64,000 nucleotides of DNA from Octopus sinensis (GCF_006345805.1 NC_043007.1:18848001-18912000); one strand, 5' to 3'. Counted from the stretch's first letter, positions 35,981 to 64,000 are shown. The notes: generated by a model not told the origin, from the letters alone. Program-made: numbers and translations.

Positions 35981-36519
35981 CTTCCTCTCTTTGTATATTT
36001 CTCTCCGTTTTTTTCTCTCCTTCCTCTCCATCTGTTTCCCTTCCTCACTCTTTTCTGAGGAAATGCGTAGGCTTGAAACATCAAAGACCTCTTTCATTTT
36101 TCCTGAGCGTCAAACTAAATACACCTTGTTTGCTGTTCTCTCACCTGTCTCCGTCCTTTGTTTTTTGTATAACTTTTAACCATGTGCGTGTACGTGTGTG
36201 TGTGTGTGTCTGGGTGTGTTTGTGCACGCGCACGCGCGTATGTATTGATTTATCGAACTAATAATGACAGATCATAACATTGACATCAGCCGTTTTTGAA
36301 GTTAGACGCTAAAGAGCGAGATGAAGTCATAAGTCTGTTCTTTCTTTTTCTCACTCTCTCTCCCTCTCTTCTCTCTCTCTCTCTATCCTCTCTCTCTCCC
36401 TCTCTTCTGTCTTTCTCTCTATTTATCTCTCTCTCTCTCTCTTTCTCTCTAAATAATGATTATAAGCTCTGGTATCGAAGAATGGTTGAATGCTTTACTT
36501 TATCTGAGATTTTGATTTT

Positions 36520-44889: not shown

Positions 44890-45460
44890 ATCCAGAAAAA
44901 TTAAGTACCAGTGGCATACTGGGGTCGATCTAATCGACTGGTCCCCCCCTCCCCGAAAATTTCGGGCCTTGTGCCTAGAGTAGAAGAGAATATATAAACA
45001 TGCCAAGGCGGCGAGCTGGCAGAAACGTTAGCACGTCGGGCGAAATGTTTAGCAGTATTTCGTCAGACTTTATGTTCTGAGTTCAAATTCCGCCGAGGTC
45101 GACTTTGCCTTTCATCCTTTCAGGGTCCATAAATTAAATACCAGTTGCGAACTGGAGTCGATCTGATTGACTAGCACCCTCCCCACTCTCCAAAAATTCC
45201 GGGCGTTGCGCCTAGAGTAGAAAGGAATAATAGTCATTCGTTTAAGGTGGCGAGTTGGCAGATTCGTTACCGCACCGGGCAAAATGCTTAGCAGCATTTT
45301 GTCTGACTTTACGTTCTGAGTTCAAATTCCACTTAGGTCGACTTTGACTTTTATCCTTTCGGGGTCGATTAAATAAGTACCAGTTGGGTCTAGAGAGTGG
45401 GGTGTACGATTTATCCCCTCCTCGCAAATGCTGGACTTGCACCGAAATTTGAAACCAGTA
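44890..45460 (+). mobile_element. Cluster of three Meta-like SINE copies
   Basis: Heads at about 45005 and 45243, plus a 5'-truncated tail at 44890. Confidence 0.8.
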
Positions 45461-52095: not shown

Positions 52096-52300
52096 AGCAC
52101 TCACATACTCGCCATGATAGATCGCTAGCCACAAAACCTTTTTCTATTTTCTTTCCCTGTTTATTTCTGTGTTCCTTTCTGTCGAGGAGCGTAAGCTCGA
52201 AACGTAAAAGACTTCCTCACTTCTCGAGCGTTAAACTAATACATCAGCTTATTGTTTAAACACCCGTCTTCGTCTTTTGTTTCTTTTTGTAAATCCTCAC
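52094..52300 (+). mobile_element. Penelope-like terminal fragment (family P2)
   Basis: Copy of the 18150-18352 family, flanked by microsatellites. Confidence 0.6.
52175..52210 (+). ncRNA. Minimal hammerhead variant (CUGUCGA core)
   Basis: CUUU CUGUCGA G GAGC-GUAA-GCUC GAAA CGU A AAAG. Confidence 0.62.
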
Positions 52301-52406
<106 letters not shown>

Positions 52407-52443: not shown

Positions 52444-52699
52444 TTAGGCTGGTGCATAATTATTGCGGCTTTTTTTTCCCCCAACAAATTTTATTCAACA
52501 AAAACAATAACAATATTTAACAAAAACATCTTTAAATGACGGTCTGACCGTCTGCCAAGCAAATGGGAAGCAGTAATTGAAGTAGATGGTGAATATGCAC
52601 CGGAATAATCATTTAAAGATGTTTTTGTTACATGCTGTTATTGTTTTTGTTGAATAAAATTTGTTGGAAAAAAGTCGCAATAATTATGCACCAACCCAA
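52444..52699 (+). mobile_element. Non-autonomous mariner derivative with TA target duplication
   Basis: About 92-bp inverted arms, TA on both sides; internal RLPSKWEAVIEVDGEYAPE* (52549-52608), a mariner transposase C-terminus. Confidence 0.85.
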
Positions 52700-52709
52700 T
52701 ATATGTATT

Positions 52710-52865
52710 TTTCCCTCTTTGTTTCTTTCTGTGTTCCTTTCTGTTGAAGAGCGTAGGCTCGAAACGTTAAAGACTTTTTCAGTTCCCGAGCGTTATACTA
52801 ATACATCTCTTTGTTTTCTACACCACCTGTCTTCGTCTTTTGTTGTTTTTTTCATAAACTCTCCC

Positions 52866-52866
<1 letters not shown>
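52710..52866 (+). mobile_element. Penelope-like terminal fragment (family P2)
   Basis: Third copy, adjacent to the mariner derivative. Confidence 0.6.
52737..52772 (+). ncRNA. Minimal hammerhead variant (CUGUUGA core)
   Basis: CUUU CUGUUGA A GAGC-GUAG-GCUC GAAA CGU U AAAG. Confidence 0.62.
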
Positions 52867-52939
<73 letters not shown>

Positions 52940-54665: not shown

Positions 54666-54771
54666 CATACAATAAAATTTTTTTAAATTAAAAATTGAAG
54701 AGAACATCAGAGAATGAGCAAAAGTTGGTAAATACGATATTAGCTTAACGCTTGAGAAGCAGAAATGAAGT

Positions 54772-54807
54772 CCTTAACGTTTCGGACGATAGTTTCTCAT
54801 CAGAGAT
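54772..54807 (-). ncRNA. Degenerate hammerhead motif (canonical CUGAUGA core; relative of the 18.2/52 kb family)
   Basis: Reverse complement AUCU CUGAUGA GAAACUAUCGUCC GAAA CGU U AAGG; flanking sequence resembles the 18.2 kb element. Confidence 0.4.
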
Positions 54808-54826
54808 TTCAAAATAGAAGCTTATC

Positions 54827-55976
54827 ATGTATGTATGTATGTATGTATGTATGTATGTATGTATGTATGTATGTACGTACGTACGTATGTATGTACGTAC
54901 GTACGTATGTATGTATGTATGTATGTATGTATGTATGTATGTATGTATGTATGTACGTACGTACGTATGTATGTATGTATGTATGTATGTATGTATGTAC
55001 GTATGTATGTATTATGTATGTGGTATGTATGTTATGTATGTATGTATGTACGTACGTACGTACGTACGTATGTATGTATGTATGTATTATGTGTATGTAT
55101 GTATGTATGTATGTATGTATGTACGTACGTACGTACGTAATGTATGTATGTATGTATGTATGTATGTATGTACGTACGTACGTACGTATGTATGTATGTA
55201 TGTATGTATGTATGTATGTATGTATGTACGTACGTACGTACGTACGTACGTTGTATGTATGTATGTATGTATGTATGTATGTATGTATGTATGTATGTAG
55301 TACTCGTACGTACGTACGTATGTATGTATGTATGTATGTATGTATGTATGTATGTATGTATGTACGTACGTACGTACTACTATGTATTGTATGTATGTAT
55401 GTATGTATGTATGTACGTACGTACGTTATGTATGTATGTATGTATGTATGTAGTATGTATGTATGTACGTACGTACGTACGTACGTATGTAATGTATGTA
55501 TGTATGTTATGTATGTATGTATGTATGTATGTATGTACGTACGTACGTACGTATGTATGTATGTATGTATGTATGTATGTATGTACGTACGTACGTATGT
55601 ATGTATGTATGTATTATGTATGTATGTATGTACGTACGTACGTACGTACGTATGTATGTATGTATGTATGTATGTATGTATGTATGTATGTATGTATGTA
55701 CGTACGTACGTACGTACGTACGTATGTATGTATGTATGTATGTATGTACGTACGTACGTACGTAGTATGTATGTATGTATGTATGTATGTATGTATGTAC
55801 GTACGTACGTACGTACGTATGTATTATGTATGTATGTATGTATGTAGTATGTATGTATTTGTATGTAGTATGTACGTACGTATGTATTATGTATGTATGT
55901 ATGTATGTATGTATGTACGTACGTACGTACGTATGTATGTATGTATGTATGTATGTTATGTACGTATGTATGTACA
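54827..55976. repeat. 1.15-kb mixed (ATGT)n/(ACGT)n microsatellite
   Basis: Alternating runs of ATGT and self-complementary ACGT. Confidence 0.97.
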
Positions 55977-56984
55977 GGAATAGTCCGACTAGAGTGGGTA
56001 GTGCTAGTTACAAAAAGACGCCGCATTATTCGAATATATAACCACATGCAAAATAACCGAGGGGGTTATAAATTAGGGGGGAATGAGAAGAAAATAAAAC
56101 TTTTAATTTTTAAGAACACCTTAGACGGGAATCGATATAAATGAGGAAGAAAATAAACGAAGGGGAAACACTTTTAGGTTTTTGTCTTGGAATTGTATTT
56201 CTTTGTTCGAATTTATTGACGTGTCTCTGTTTATTCAAAGAAAACGAATCAGACTGGAATATTTTTCTATAGTGAAATGGTTGTTTGTTTTTAATCTTTC
56301 TGTTTCTCCTCTTTGCGCATGACCTCGTGGCAGTTCAAGGTACTTCAGACATCTCTTCTCATTTGCATAGTCCTCCTACCCCTAATTCTTTCATTTCAAT
56401 CCCGTTCCGCACCGCGATTGCCTGATAGGAATATTATATCGATTACCGATATTCTTTGATTGGTACTTTATTTTATCGACCGCGGAAGGAGGATGAACAA
56501 GTCTGACCTCGATGGGAATTTGAACCCAGTACATAAACCCAAATGTTGCGAGCAGCCCAAGCATAGCTGTGTGGTTAAGAAGCTCGGTTTGCAGTCATTT
56601 TGTTTCGGGTTCGATCACAGTGCGCGGCGCATTGAGTAATTCTCTTCCACCACAGACCCAGAACAATCGATATTGGTTTCTTTACATCTGCATATAGTAG
56701 CGGTTCGTCAAAAGTTATCGATGGAATAATATGATACCTTTAAATATATACTGGGGTCAATTTGCTTAACTAAGTTCCTTCAGGACAGTGCTCCAGCATG
56801 ACCGCAATCCAATTACTGAAACAAGTAATAGATAAAAGATAAAGACACATATATTGTGTGGCAAAAAGCTTACTTCCCAACCACATGGTTCTGGGTTCAG
56901 TCTCACTGAGTAGCACTTTGAGCAAGTGTCTTCTATAGCCTCAGGCCAGTGGATTTGGTAGACAGAAATTGAAAGAAGCCTGTC

Positions 56985-58268: not shown

Positions 58269-58682
58269 ATAGGCGCAGGAGTGGCTGTGTGGTAAGTAGC
58301 TTGTTTACGAACCACATGGTTCCGGGTTCAGTCCCACTGCATGGCATCTTGGGCAAGTGTCTTCTGCTATAGCCCCGAGCCGACCAAAGCCTTGTGAGTG
58401 GATTTGGTAGACGGAAACTGAAAGAAGCCCGTCGTATATATGTATATGTATATGTGTGTGCGCGTGTATGTTTGTGTGTCTGTGTTTGTCCCCCTAGCAT
58501 TGCTTGACAACGGATGCTGGTGTGTTTACGTCCCCGTTACTTAGCGGTTCGGCAAAAGAGACCGATAGAATAAGTACTGGGCTTACAAAAGAATAAGTCC
58601 CGGGGTCGAGTTGCTCGATTAAAGGTGGTGCTCCAGCATGGCCACAGTCAAATGACTGAAACAAGTAAAAGAATATAAAAGA
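58269..58682 (+). mobile_element. Family A SINE, full length
   Basis: ATAGGCGCAGGAGTGGCTGTGTGG head through AAGTAAAAGAAT tail. Confidence 0.9.
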
Positions 58683-61884: not shown

Positions 61885-62100
61885 ACTCTTTTACTCTTTT
61901 ATTACTCTTTTACTTGTTTCAGTCATTTGACTGCGGCCATGCTGGAGCACCACCTTTAATCGAGCAACTCGACCCCGGGACTTATTCTTTGTAAGCCCAG
62001 TACTTATTCTATCGGTCTCTTTCGACGATCTGCTAAGTTACGGGGACATAAACACACCAGCATTGGTTGTCAAGCGATGTTGGGGGGTACAAAAACATAT
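61885..62100 (-). mobile_element. Family A SINE 3' half
   Basis: Tail consensus. Confidence 0.85.
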
Positions 62101-62183
62101 ATATATATATAGAAATTCGGGGTGAGTACTTGATAATTATAAGCACCTGTGTATACCGTTTGGTGGTGTAGGTGGTGGAGTAA

Positions 62184-62603
62184 ATTGATCAAAATAAAAT
62201 AAAAACATGATGCGAAGGATTCAGCGGTACATATGTTTCGGGCCTTTATTAGACAGATTTATAACAATGCATAATGTATGTCTGTGGCCTTCTTCAGCCG
62301 CGCACAACAGCTTCCACAAGGACATGTGTTCAATCAAAAATTCTTGGTTGGGGATGCAAATCCTCTCATTCACGTACGACATAATGCGGCAGCAGCATAG
62401 AATTGAAGCGTCCATCTCTTTCTTCTCTCAATGTAGAATGAGGAAAATGGATGTTGAGGTAATGTAAATAAATAAATACATATAGAGGTGAAGATGGAGG
62501 GGCGAGAGTTCGGGACGAGGGATAAAAAATGTATAAAAAGTGTAAGTATAGAATAATATAAAAATGTAGAGGATAAAGATATAAAGAGTTGTAAGGAGAT
62601 GTA
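62184..62603 (-). mobile_element. Penelope-like terminal repeat, left (inverted) arm
   Basis: Near-perfect reverse complement of 63054-63475; contains the hammerhead. Confidence 0.7.
62224..62301 (-). ncRNA. Type-I hammerhead ribozyme motif, inverted copy of 63359-63435
   Basis: Reverse complement reads GCGG CUGAAGA AGGCC...GGCCC GAAA CAUAUGU A CCGC. Confidence 0.8.
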
Positions 62604-63053
62604 TTCTGTTGTATGTATGTGTGTGTACGCGCGTGCGTGTGGGTGCGTGTGTGTTTATGTACGTGTTTACGCGCGAGTGCGTGTGTATGCTTATAGGCTT
62701 GGAGGCGTATATGTACGCGTGTATGTGGGTGTATGTATCCATGATGATATGTATGTACTAGAAGTCCATTTAATTCAAGGAACCAGATTAAATGCTCATC
62801 AGCTCTGATTTACAACGCATTAAGTCCCCAGACGAAACTGTTGATTTACTGACAATTCTACAACTAAATTTTATCAATCTCCTGACCACCATGCTTGGTC
62901 CGTAACCTCTATACATCCCTTATATTTACATTCTTTTACACTTTTATCATGGTTTTATCAGTTTTTTTACTTTTATTCTATTTCTATTTTTACTTTATAA
63001 CCTTATGCCTTTACATTTCTTTATATTTCTTTATATTCTTTATACCCCCACTT

Positions 63054-63475
63054 TACATCTCCTTACAACTCTTTATATCTTTATCCTCTACATTTTTATA
63101 TTATTCTATACTTACACTTTTTATACATTTTTTATCCCTCGTCCCGAACTCTCGCCCCTCCATCTTCACCTCTATATATGTATTTATTTATTTACATTAC
63201 CTCAACATCCAATTTTCCTCATTCTACATTGAGAGAAGAAAGAGATGGACGCTTCAATTCTATGCTGCTGCCGCATTATGTCGTACGTGAATGAGAGGAT
63301 TTGCATCCCCAACCAAGAATTTTTGATGTAACACATGTCCTTGTGGAAGCTGTTGTGCGCGGCTGAAGAAGGCCACAGACATACATTATGCATTGTATAA
63401 ATCTGTCTAATAAAGGCTCGAAACATATGTACCGCTGAATCCTTCGCATCATGTTTTTATTTTATTTTGATCAAT
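63054..63475 (+). mobile_element. Penelope-like terminal repeat, right arm
   Basis: Inverted partner of 62184-62603; ends in an (AT)n tract. Confidence 0.7.
63359..63435 (+). ncRNA. Type-I hammerhead ribozyme motif (Penelope-like terminus)
   Basis: Stem I GCGG/CCGC; core CUGAAGA (63363-69); extended stem II; GAAA (63420-23); palindromic stem III ACAUAUGU; GUA site after 63431. Confidence 0.8.
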
Positions 63476-63483
63476 ATATATAT

Positions 63484-63577
<94 letters not shown>

Positions 63578-63673
63578 TAATCCAAACGGGAAAACAGAAA
63601 AAACAACAACACGTGGAACAATTAAAGTATTATTATTAGGCGCTCAGGAAAGAGGGAATATATATATATACAT

Positions 63674-63836
63674 ACGATGGGCTTCTTTCAGTTTCCGTCT
63701 ACCAAATCCACTCACAATGCTTTGGTCGGCTCGAGCCTATAGTAGAAGACACTTGCCCAAGGTGCCACGCAGTGGGACTGAACCCGGAACCATGTGGTTG
63801 GTAAGCAAGCTACTTACCACTCAGCCACTCCTGTGC
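63674..63836 (-). mobile_element. Family A SINE 5' half
   Basis: Head and CORE-like body. Confidence 0.85.
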
Positions 63837-64000
63837 CTTATGGAATGTTTTCTTCCTTTTGTATTGGTTATTATGTTCATCGGTTCCATTCTAATGTTAT
63901 TTTATTAAGGCGTTGTCCGCGGTTGTCGCCGTACCATTTGCCAATGTCTTGACTTCTCTAAATTTTTATTGAGCGGTTTTGTTGTTTTTCTGTGTTTCGC

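What the first reader, a model, noticed from the sequence alone, without database searches (positions are those of the whole stretch)
62184..63475. 420-bp near-perfect inverted repeat carrying two intact-looking hammerhead ribozymes
Seen: 62184-62603 is the reverse complement of 63054-63475 with only a handful of differences by eye, around a 450-bp spacer. Each arm holds a type-I hammerhead: stem I GCGG/CCGC, CUGAAGA, a long stem II, GAAA, palindromic ACAUAUGU and a GUA site (after 63431 on +). The 10.1-11.1 position is A-C rather than the usual G-C. Known: Penelope-like elements carry minimal hammerheads in their terminal repeats and often leave inverted termini (Cervera & de la Pena 2014; Lunse et al. 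2017). Inference: this is a young PLE insertion. Any read-through transcript would contain one ribozyme plus its full antisense, so self-cleavage competes with a 420-bp dsRNA that should be an ADAR/Dicer substrate in a lineage with extensive A-to-I editing, a possible ribozyme on/off switch.
Basis: partly seen in the sequence, partly recalled or inferred. Interest (0 to 1): 0.8.

Follow-up and report, generated by a model that had tools for sequence, protein, structure and literature searches.

The report
Inverted retroelement fragment carrying two hammerhead motifs
This is most likely a young, dead-on-arrival double insertion of the 3' end of a Penelope-like retroelement, laid down head-to-head so that each arm carries one hammerhead ribozyme motif; the arrangement is already described for such elements and is ordinary for an invertebrate genome.

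Summary
Arms 62184-62603 (-) and 63054-63475 (+) are about 98% identical inverted copies around a 450-bp asymmetric spacer. Each has a complete type-I hammerhead core near its outer end: GCGG / CUGAAGA / long helix II / GAAA / palindromic ACAUAUGU / GUA / CCGC, with the cut after 63431 (+) or 62228 (-).

No Rfam hammerhead model scores either motif, even at E<=10. The same models also miss a textbook-style minimal hammerhead elsewhere in the window, so this negative says little. A hand descriptor finds 0.047 chance hits per window, or 0.003 if helix III must be palindromic.

The layout matches published Penelope-like element (PLE) insertions:
- head-to-head 5'-truncated copies with 3' ends outward;
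- identical outer termini;
- (TA)n flanks;
- a one-sided unique extension;
- a hammerhead with short helix I, large helix II and palindromic helix III.

There is no RT/GIY-YIG ORF, and no second copy could be retrieved, so family membership is inferred.

The "A-C at 10.1-11.1" can also be read as the PLE-typical extra nucleotide after A9 plus G10.1-C11.1 with a bulged C.

A read-through transcript would bury the ribozyme in a hairpin of about -840 kcal/mol. That is true of any inverted PLE. The proposed ADAR/Dicer "switch" has no evidence. Low interest; a new member of a known kind.

The parts
62184..62603 (-). Left arm: inverted, 5'-truncated copy of the element's 3' region. Its 3' end is at 62184 and its truncation point at 62603.
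   Evidence: 98.1% identical to the right arm. The purine-rich domain stops abruptly at 62603/62604.
63054..63475 (+). Right arm: the same 3' region in forward orientation, with its 3' end at 63475 abutting (TA)n.
63359..63435 (+). Type-I hammerhead motif, right arm. Helix I GCGG/CCGC; CUGAAGA 63363-63369; 50-nt helix II 63370-63419; GAAA 63420-63423; helix III C-AUAU-G; cut predicted after A63431.
   Evidence: The constrained fold lies 1.9 kcal/mol (96 nt) to 4.1 kcal/mol (151 nt) above the free MFE. No Rfam hit.
62224..62301 (-). Type-I hammerhead motif, left arm. The core is identical. Helix II has G-C where the right arm has G-U, and one extra U in the distal part. The cut is predicted between 62228 and 62227.
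62604..62760 (.). Spacer part 1: imperfect GT/GC-rich microsatellite-like filler at the inner junction.
   Evidence: its only matches are other TG/ATGT microsatellites in the window. The mir-297/mir-466 'hits' are low-complexity artefacts.
62761..63053 (+). Spacer part 2: unique sequence. From about 62860 it is the same pyrimidine-rich domain that continues into the right arm. It is probably the further 5' part of the longer right-hand copy.
   Evidence: GC skew of -0.5 to -1.0 (mostly -0.6 or below) and AT skew about -0.4 (-0.15 to -0.49) run unbroken from about 62860 to 63220 across the repeat boundary at 63054. No ORF.
62114..62183 (-). 70-bp unique stretch between a (TA)8 run and the left arm, present at one end only. 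It is a candidate PLE 'tail' extension, or else ordinary flank.
   Evidence: no other copy in the window. Compared with PMC8557442 and PMC11167929. Status is inferred.
62097..62113 (.). (TA)8 on the left side. It also serves as the tail of the upstream SINE.
63474..63573 (.). (TA)~50 directly abutting the right arm's 3' end. On its far side lies the 3' end of an unrelated hammerhead-family fragment (63572-63664, -).

Best explanation
The locus is a non-autonomous remnant of a Penelope-like retroelement (PLE), or of a PLE-mobilised derivative. It was inserted as two 5'-truncated copies of the element's 3' region, head-to-head with the 3' ends outward, in or next to a (TA)n microsatellite.

Proposed mechanism (inferred). 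The GIY-YIG endonuclease cut both target strands. Both 3'-OH ends primed reverse transcription at the same start site near the RNA 3' end; this would explain the identical outer termini ...UUGAUCAAU. The two cDNAs ran inward, one to 62603 and the other at least to about 62860. They were then joined with microsatellite-like filler between them.

Each arm therefore carries the element's resident type-I hammerhead 44-47 nt from its 3' end. The ribozyme is of the PLE/metazoan kind: short helix I, large helix II, and a 2-bp helix III with a palindromic AUAU loop. That kind is expected to cleave poorly as a monomer and better as a dimer through the 8-nt palindrome ACAUAUGU.

At this locus the two motifs lie on opposite strands, so no single transcript holds two ribozymes. 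Any read-through RNA would fold into a roughly 420-bp hairpin that buries the motif. The ribozymes here are thus passengers of the insertion, not a device of the locus.

Shown: the repeat, the motif, the missing ORF, the asymmetric copy lengths and the flanks. Inferred: PLE membership, the double-priming origin, and an age of about 1 My.
For: Repeat and its limits.

Complete hammerhead core in both arms, with chance expectation 0.047 or 0.003 per window.

Orientation: both motifs face outward, 44 nt from the identical termini.

The right copy is longer than the left: the pyrimidine-rich domain runs through the repeat boundary.

No coding capacity.

Matches to published PLE traits:
- An inverted 5'-truncated copy forming inverted repeats, an extension at only one end, and microsatellite bias including (TA)n (PMC8557442).
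- Hammerheads with helix I of 4-5 bp, an enlarged helix II, an extra nucleotide between 9 and 10.1, palindromic 15.2-16.2/loop 3, and pairs of motifs on opposite strands 100-700 bp apart (PMC4209133).
- A PLE protein that cleaves and extends both strands and starts reverse transcription at fixed internal sites roughly 85-90 nt downstream of the hammerhead cut (PMC11167929).

The genome context is rich in such elements. A second, unrelated hammerhead-bearing repeat family has about 8 copies in the window. One has its 3' end on the other side of the same (TA)n, and its ends (TTTGGATCAACTT) resemble the arm's end (TTTTGATCAAT).

Youth: 3 substitutions in about 420 bp. With the octopus calibration of PMC13282606 (JC 0.09 = 25 My) this is about 1 My. 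That estimate assumes the window is octopus and that there was no gene conversion.
Against: No RT or GIY-YIG sequence lies in or next to the unit. The only RT fragment in the window (7214-7806) looks LINE-like by its motifs (my reading; the tools show only PF00078 homologs) and is 54 kb away.

No other copy of the arm was found, either in the window or in any reachable collection. So repetitiveness, a full-length partner and an empty orthologous site are all untested.

Rfam hammerhead models give no score.

In the most stable register, the base of helix II is an A-C mismatch rather than the G10.1-C11.1 pair that Cervera & de la Pena call highly conserved.

The hammerhead fold is 2-6 kcal/mol above the MFE.

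The candidate tail is 70 bp, against the 30-40 bp described. Target-site duplications cannot be read in TA repeats.
Confidence: 0.68

Rival explanations
1. A single older PLE-derived fragment (the right copy) was partly duplicated in inverted orientation by a DNA-level event, such as replication template switching or fold-back repair at the microsatellite. No retrotransposition was involved in making the second arm.
For: The region is full of microsatellites that promote fork stalling. The inner junction is microsatellite-like filler. The arms are nearly identical.
Against: Both arms end at exactly the same outer nucleotide, which is the presumed RT start. A random DNA duplication would not be expected to respect that position. 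The head-to-head form with 3' ends outward is the specific form described for PLE insertions.
Confidence: 0.12
2. A non-autonomous DNA transposon or foldback-type element with 420-bp terminal inverted repeats, inserted at a TA. The hammerhead-like motif is either fortuitous or was captured.
For: Long perfect terminal inverted repeats with a short internal segment. A TA dinucleotide can be read next to both ends: 62181-62182 and 63477-63478.
Against: With a TA duplication the terminal bases of the two arms would differ (A vs T). The right flank is (TA)50, so a TA there carries no information. A full hammerhead core with palindromic helix III is expected 0.003 times per window by chance. The right copy's compositional domain extends past the repeat; this fits 5' truncation, not a TIR with a defined inner edge.
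Confidence: 0.08
3. Assembly artefact: a fold-back or chimeric long read produced a false palindrome.
For: PLE tandem/inverted structures are known to cause assembly problems (PMC8557442).
Against: The arms differ at 3 substitutions and 3 indels. They are separated by a 450-bp asymmetric, non-palindromic spacer, and the outer flanks are different unique sequences. A missed-adapter fold-back gives a spacer-less perfect palindrome.
Confidence: 0.05
4. A functional hairpin-RNA locus. Read-through transcription yields a 420-bp dsRNA that is edited by ADAR or diced into small RNAs. It either gates the ribozyme, or silences the PLE family in trans.
For: The computed hairpin is about -841/-826 kcal/mol with the hammerhead fully paired. 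That long perfect dsRNA is a substrate for ADAR and Dicer is established general knowledge.
Against: There is no evidence of transcription, conservation or selection. The configuration is a routine by-product of PLE insertion. The arms are diverging by indels as neutral DNA would. Any small-RNA output would be incidental, not a 'switch'.
Confidence: 0.04

Closest known systems
Penelope-like element insertions with an inverted 5'-truncated copy (Evgen'ev & Arkhipova 2005; Craig et al. 2021, PMC8557442)
   Same: Head-to-head inverted copies with 3' ends outward, heavy 5' truncation, an extension at one end only, microsatellite flanks, and a hammerhead in the repeated terminal region.
   Different: No RT/GIY-YIG ORF and no direct pseudo-LTR. 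The forward copy is itself only about 0.6-0.7 kb. The candidate tail is 70 bp rather than 30-40 bp.
PLE-associated minimal/type-I hammerheads (Cervera & de la Pena 2014, PMC4209133; Lunse, Weinberg & Breaker 2017, cited in PMC6765202)
   Same: Type-I topology, 4-bp helix I without a defined loop 1, enlarged helix II, a nucleotide after A9, palindromic helix III/loop 3 implying action as a dimer, and pairs on opposite strands a few hundred bp apart.
   Different: Helix II is far longer: 50-51 nt with an internal loop, against 7-8 bp. Helix III keeps 2 bp plus a tetraloop, as in canonical invertebrate type-I motifs. One extra C on the 3' strand of helix II forces either an A-C at 10.1-11.1 or a bulged C.
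Animal non-LTR retrozymes (Cervera & de la Pena 2020, PMC7229834; Li et al. 2026 bioRxiv 10.64898/2026.07.22.740005)
   Same: A short non-coding unit (about 0.4-0.7 kb) with one type-I hammerhead that has a 2-bp helix III and tetraloop. Such units are thought to derive from PLE pseudo-LTRs. The axolotl HHR_Amex2 also has a mismatch (U-U) at the base of helix II and still cleaves.
   Different: Retrozymes are head-to-tail tandem repeats that release circular RNAs by double cleavage. Here the two units are inverted, so one transcript never has two ribozymes.
Twin-priming inversions of LINE-1
   Same: Both target strands prime reverse transcription, giving inverted segments joined internally.
   Different: L1 twin priming joins different parts of one RNA. 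Here both arms are the same 3' region, starting at the same nucleotide.

Membership tests
Hammerhead ribozyme, type I | Conserved core: C3 U4 G5 A6 N7 G8 A9, G12 A13 A14, A15.1-U16.1, H17 not G. | tested here: met
   CUGAAGA, GAAA, A..U and A17 are present in both arms.
Hammerhead ribozyme, type I | Three helices around the core, with the open end in helix I. | tested here: met
   Helix I is GCGG/CCGC. Helix II is GGCC/GGC(C/U) plus ACAGA/UCUGU and a distal hairpin. Helix III is A-U and C-G with an AUAU loop. The constrained fold lies 1.9-5.7 kcal/mol above the MFE.
Hammerhead ribozyme, type I | G10.1-C11.1 pair closing helix II. | tested here: inconclusive
   The most stable register has A-C there (-9.0/-10.9 kcal/mol). 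An alternative with a bulged A and a bulged C gives G10.1-C11.1 at a cost of 3.4-4.1 kcal/mol.
Hammerhead ribozyme, type I | Score at or above the gathering threshold of an Rfam hammerhead covariance model. | tested here: not met
   No hammerhead hit at gathering score, nor at E<=10 in 1.5 kb or 121 nt. The models also miss the compact minimal motif at 10226, so their sensitivity for this subclass is poor.
Hammerhead ribozyme, type I | Mg2+-dependent self-cleavage 3' of H17. | not testable with these tools
   Needs in vitro transcription and a cleavage assay.
PLE-associated hammerhead (Cervera & de la Pena 2014) | Extra nucleotide between A9 and 10.1. | tested here: inconclusive
   A63370 / A62290 follows A9. 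Whether it is bulged or pairs with C depends on the register.
PLE-associated hammerhead (Cervera & de la Pena 2014) | Palindromic 15.2-16.2 and loop 3; short helix I; enlarged helix II. | tested here: met
   ACAUAUGU is its own reverse complement. Helix I is 4 bp. Helix II is 50-51 nt.
PLE-associated hammerhead (Cervera & de la Pena 2014) | Lies in the pseudo-LTR of an element encoding RT and GIY-YIG endonuclease. | tested here: not met
   There is no such ORF in the unit or nearby. The paper notes that most genomic motifs are likewise solitary, presumed to be truncated PLEs.
Penelope-like element insertion | ORF with a telomerase-like RT and a GIY-YIG endonuclease. | tested here: not met
   The longest ORFs in 61900-63700 are <=131 aa and low-complexity. 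The ten longest window ORFs have no Pfam hit.
Penelope-like element insertion | Inverted 5'-truncated copy adjoining the 5' end of the forward copy. | tested here: met
   The arms are head-to-head, the outer termini are identical, and the right copy extends further 5'.
Penelope-like element insertion | Extension ('tail') at one end; microsatellite target. | tested here: inconclusive
   A 70-bp unique stretch occurs at the left end only. (TA)8 lies beyond it and (TA)50 at the right end. Without other copies it cannot be shown that the 70 bp belongs to the element.
Penelope-like element insertion | Member of a dispersed repeat family with full-length masters. | not testable with these tools
   The source genome is not available. 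There were no matches in the window or the collections.
Non-LTR retrozyme | Head-to-tail tandem repeats, each with a hammerhead. | tested here: not met
   There are only two copies, and they are inverted.
TIR DNA transposon / MITE | Defined terminal inverted repeats flanked by a target-site duplication. | tested here: inconclusive
   A TA can be read on both sides, but the right flank is a TA repeat, and the terminal bases would then mismatch.

The most novel reading that the evidence does not exclude
The inverted arrangement is used, not just tolerated. In read-through RNA the antisense arm holds the hammerhead in an inactive 420-bp duplex. A-to-I hyper-editing or dicing of that duplex then decides whether the ribozyme can fold and cut. 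This would make the locus an editing-gated self-cleaving RNA, or a hairpin source of small RNAs against its own PLE family.
Probability: 0.03. Interest if true: 0.6.

Novelty: new member of a known kind. Interest (0 to 1): 0.2.

Why it matters
The main value is for annotation. The locus should be masked as a PLE-derived inverted repeat with two hammerhead motifs that Rfam models do not detect. It is a clean, young example of the head-to-head PLE insertion form, with both outer ends at the same nucleotide. That fits the recent in vitro finding that a PLE protein cleaves and extends both target strands from fixed RT start sites. The unusual helix II, with its 50-nt length and ambiguous 10.1-11.1 register, could serve as a small test of how much variation the hammerhead core tolerates. 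It does not open a new question.

Tried and rejected
- **Rfam cmscan** of the whole window at gathering score, and of 1.5-kb, 121-nt and 101-nt pieces at E<=10, gave no hammerhead hit. The mir-297, mir-466 and snoRNA hits in the spacer and flank are microsatellite artefacts.
- **Fetching other copies.** I used a spurious 86-aa ORF of the arm as a protein proxy (nothing). Exact-pattern scans of metagenome contigs and prokaryotic genome contigs also found nothing. External comparison was therefore impossible.
- **Coding capacity.** ORF listing and Pfam on the longest window ORFs show these are microsatellite translations.
- **Lineage.** I tried to establish it from a LINE RT fragment. I recognise the SINE as octopus-like from memory only.
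- **RNAcofold of two ribozyme copies**. The MFE dimer uses other complementary stretches, so it neither supports nor refutes the helix-III dimer.
- **A CTGATGAG box** on the minus strand of the spacer (62785-62792) has an 8-bp stem after it but no GAAA/UH. I rejected it as chance.
- **Scripting.** The first regex missed the motifs because of lazy matching. The first shuffle script timed out. Both were redone.

Full report
**1. The observation**

The repeat finder gives three collinear blocks: 62181-62263/63396-63478, 62264-62448/63212-63396 and 62480-62603/63054-63177, at 98-100% complementarity. A pairwise alignment shows only an adjacent TG/GT swap, one C/T difference and three small indels (TA, A, T) over about 423 columns. 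blastn reports 98.1% over 426 columns, and no further copy of the arm anywhere in the 64-kb window. The secure limits are 62184 and 63475. The spacer (62604-63053) is 450 bp and is not symmetric.

**2. The hammerhead motifs**

On the plus strand of the right arm the sequence reads: GCGG (63359-62), CUGAAGA (63363-69), a 50-nt helix II (63370-63419), GAAA (63420-23), CAUAUG (63424-29), U16.1 (63430), A17 (63431), CCGC (63432-35). The left arm has the mirror image on the minus strand (62301-62224), with the cut between 62228 and 62227. Every invariant core position is present in both arms.

A hand descriptor was applied with these requirements:
- CUGANGA, then helix II closed by at least 4 pairs, allowing one unpaired or mismatched base at its foot;
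- GAAA, then 2-15 nt, then UH;
- helix I of at least 4 bp.

It hits only these two sites and one other (10226, see section 5). In 300 first-order Markov surrogates of the window the mean is 0.047 hits. It is 0.003 if A15.1...U16.1 must be palindromic, as ACAUAUGU is.

Against this, no Rfam hammerhead model reports the motif at gathering score, at E<=10 in 1.5 kb, or at E<=10 in 121 nt. The same models also miss the compact, textbook-style minimal hammerhead at 10226. The negative therefore reflects the models' poor reach for this subclass, not evidence against the motif.

Thermodynamically the hammerhead fold is accessible but not preferred. It lies 1.9 kcal/mol above the MFE in a 96-nt context and 4-6 kcal/mol above it in 151 nt, where a hairpin AGCUGU...GCGGCU competes for helix I and C3/U4.

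**3. The 'A-C at 10.1-11.1'**

The 3' strand of helix II has one more nucleotide (GGCYC) than the 5' strand (GGCC). Two registers are possible:
- The alternative treats A63370 as the extra nucleotide between A9 and 10.1. Cervera & de la Pena list that nucleotide as a conserved trait of PLE hammerheads. It then pairs G10.1-C11.1 and G-Y, bulges one C, and continues C-G, C-G. This costs 3.4-4.1 kcal/mol (PMC4209133, which also describe a bulge within helix II in the D. virilis motif).

The single substitution between the arms inside the ribozyme (C in the left arm, U in the right) faces a G in either register, so pairing is kept. A mismatch at the foot of helix II is not necessarily fatal. The axolotl retrozyme motif HHR_Amex2 has U-U there and still self-cleaves 22% per hour (PMC7229834). 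Which register is used, and whether the RNA cuts at all, needs an assay.

**4. What the unit is**

It does not code for anything. The longest ORFs across 61900-63700 are <=131 aa and low-complexity. The longest window ORFs are microsatellite translations without Pfam hits.

Both ribozymes face outward and lie 44 nt from identical outer termini (...UUUUGAUCAAU). On the plus strand the arms therefore run 3'<-5' then 5'->3', that is, head-to-head.

The two copies are unequal. A strongly pyrimidine-rich domain runs without a break from about 62860 to 63220, straight through the repeat boundary at 63054 (GC skew -0.5 to -1.0, AT skew about -0.4). On the left side the mirrored purine-rich domain stops dead at 62603, where a GT/GC-rich microsatellite-like filler begins. 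So the right copy is longer (at least about 615 bp) and the left is a 5'-truncated inverted copy.

The right arm abuts (TA)~50. The left arm is followed by 70 bp of unique sequence and then (TA)8.

This is the published anatomy of PLE insertions. [quoted passage not shown] Hammerheads sit in the repeated terminal region, and pairs occur on opposite strands a few hundred bp apart (PMC4209133).

The in vitro work on the Anolis Poseidon element adds a mechanism. The protein cleaves and extends both target strands. Reverse transcription starts at fixed internal sites roughly 85-90 nt downstream of the hammerhead cut, and the segment between two start sites is the 'tail' (PMC11167929).

I therefore propose that both target strands primed cDNA synthesis at the same start site. 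That would explain the nucleotide-identical outer ends. The two cDNAs were then joined internally. The 70-bp stretch may be a tail, giving 44+70 = 114 nt downstream of the cut on the left copy. It is longer than the 30-40 bp described, and without other copies this remains a guess.

**5. Context inside the window**

The descriptor's third hit led to a second, unrelated repeat family. Its motif at 10226-10253 is CUGACGA-A-GAGC-UCC-GCUC-GAAA-CG-UU. This has all the PLE minimal-hammerhead hallmarks: the extra A, G10.1-C11.1 and the palindromic ACGU.

An HMM built from the first copies finds about eight copies:
- 10165-10360 (+).
- 52682-52869 (+), 52137-52304 (+) and 18136-18288 (-). These three share CUGU[U/C]GA, an A6-to-U change in an invariant position.
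- 35992-36184 (+), with G10.1-C11.1 changed to A-U.
- 54729-54805 (-).
- 63572-63664 (-), 5'-truncated and without the ribozyme.
- 63877-63999 (+), running off the window.

The copy at 63572-63664 has its 3' end on the far side of the same (TA)n that the right arm abuts. Two of these copies end in TTTGGATCAACTT / TTTGGATTAACCTT, which resembles the arm's TTTTGATCAAT. This is suggestive of a shared RT start motif, but it is too short to weigh heavily.

The window is otherwise saturated with a SINE (about 27 copies of each half) and with microsatellites. It also holds an RT fragment that looks LINE-like by its motifs (7214-7806). So this is a metazoan genome in which hammerhead-bearing retroelement debris is common.

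I could not verify the species. Hammerhead_1 matches and Penelope activity are on record for cephalopods (PMC6962438; PMC13282606).

**6. Age**

Three substituted sites in about 420 bp give K of about 0.007. If the window is octopus, the calibration in PMC13282606 applies (JC 0.09 = 25 My, i.e. about 0.0036 per site per My). If the arms were also born identical, this is about 1 My, with a Poisson range of roughly 0.2-3 My. Gene conversion between the arms would make this an underestimate. 'Young' is fair.

**7. The proposed switch**

Folding the whole 1292-nt read-through RNA gives -841 kcal/mol (plus strand) and -826 kcal/mol (minus strand). In these folds 417 and 414 of the first 420 arm positions pair with the other arm, and the hammerhead lies entirely inside the duplex. 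The geometric claim is therefore right, and such a duplex would be an expected ADAR/Dicer substrate by general knowledge.

The rest of the proposal is not supported:
- The structure is an automatic consequence of a common PLE insertion form.
- The two ribozymes can never meet in one transcript, so the dimer route that such motifs appear to need is closed in cis.
- The arms are accumulating indels like neutral DNA.
- Transcription, conservation and editing are all untested.

I rate the switch, or a hairpin-small-RNA role, at about 3-4%.

**8. Rivals**

- A DNA-level inverted duplication of one PLE fragment (0.12) is hard to square with both arms ending at the same outer nucleotide.
- A long-TIR DNA transposon (0.08) cannot be excluded on the TA flanks alone. 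It would require the hammerhead to be fortuitous, and it does not explain the unequal copy lengths.
- A fold-back assembly artefact (0.05) is unlikely given the asymmetric 450-bp spacer and the differences between the arms.

**9. Verdict**

The locus is a new member of a known kind. Its only slightly unusual points are the 50-nt helix II and the ambiguous foot of that helix. Interest is low (0.2).

Noticed in passing
window 10165-10360 (+), core 10226-10253; also 52682-52869 (+), 52137-52304 (+), 18136-18288 (-), 35992-36184 (+), 54729-54805 (-), 63572-63664 (-), 63877-63999 (+): A second, unrelated short repeat family (about 170-200 bp, about 8 copies in 64 kb) carries a PLE-style minimal hammerhead: CUGACGA-A-GAGCuccGCUC-GAAA-CG-UU. 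Rfam does not detect it. Several copies end in (TA)n/(TG)n.
   Followed up: partly
window 52740-52746, 52193-52199 approx., 18230 region (-): Three copies of that family share CUGU[U/C]GA, an A6-to-U change at an invariant core position. A subfamily with a presumably dead ribozyme therefore still multiplied. The copy at 36055 has G10.1-C11.1 replaced by A-U, a double change that keeps the pair.
   Followed up: no
window 63466-63475 vs 10333-10345 and 63574-63587 (-): The 3' termini of the arm (TTTTGATCAAT, containing the palindrome TTGATCAA) and of two family-B copies (TTTGGATCAACTT, TTTGGATTAACCTT) look alike. All three abut TA-rich sequence. This may be a shared reverse-transcription start motif.
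   Followed up: no
window 63474-63573: One (TA)~50 tract has a retroelement 3' end on each side, pointing at each other: the right arm (+) and a family-B fragment (-). This fits repeated targeting of TA repeats by such elements.
   Followed up: partly
window 7214-7806 (+): A frameshifted reverse-transcriptase fragment with motifs NYRPVSL, FLDFAKAFDKVDH, SGVPRGTLLGPLLF and YADD, which looks LINE-type to me. It has over 1000 PF00078 homologs in the protein collection, the best at 62-79% identity on anonymous metagenome scaffolds.
   Followed up: partly
window-wide, e.g. 61901-62096 (-), 63674-63835 (+), 58275-58675: A bipartite SINE-like repeat occurs about 27 times per half in 64 kb, often with a microsatellite between or after the halves. 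ARAGORN finds no tRNA-like gene in it.
   Followed up: partly
window 54765-56047, 4519-5156, 13679-14769 and others: All ORFs over 200 aa are translations of (ATGT)n, (GTAT)n and similar microsatellites on both strands. None has a Pfam hit.
   Followed up: yes
window 12142-13248 and 44898-45386: Tandem arrays of 184-389-bp and 239-bp units (79-88% matching) from another interspersed repeat (…GGATTAAGTCGATTATATCGACC…). Not examined.
   Followed up: no
window 62785-62792 (-): A canonical CUGAUGAG box lies on the minus strand of the spacer. It is followed by an 8-bp stem (CAUUUAAU/AUUAAAUG), but there is no GAAA or cleavage triplet. Judged to be chance.
   Followed up: yes
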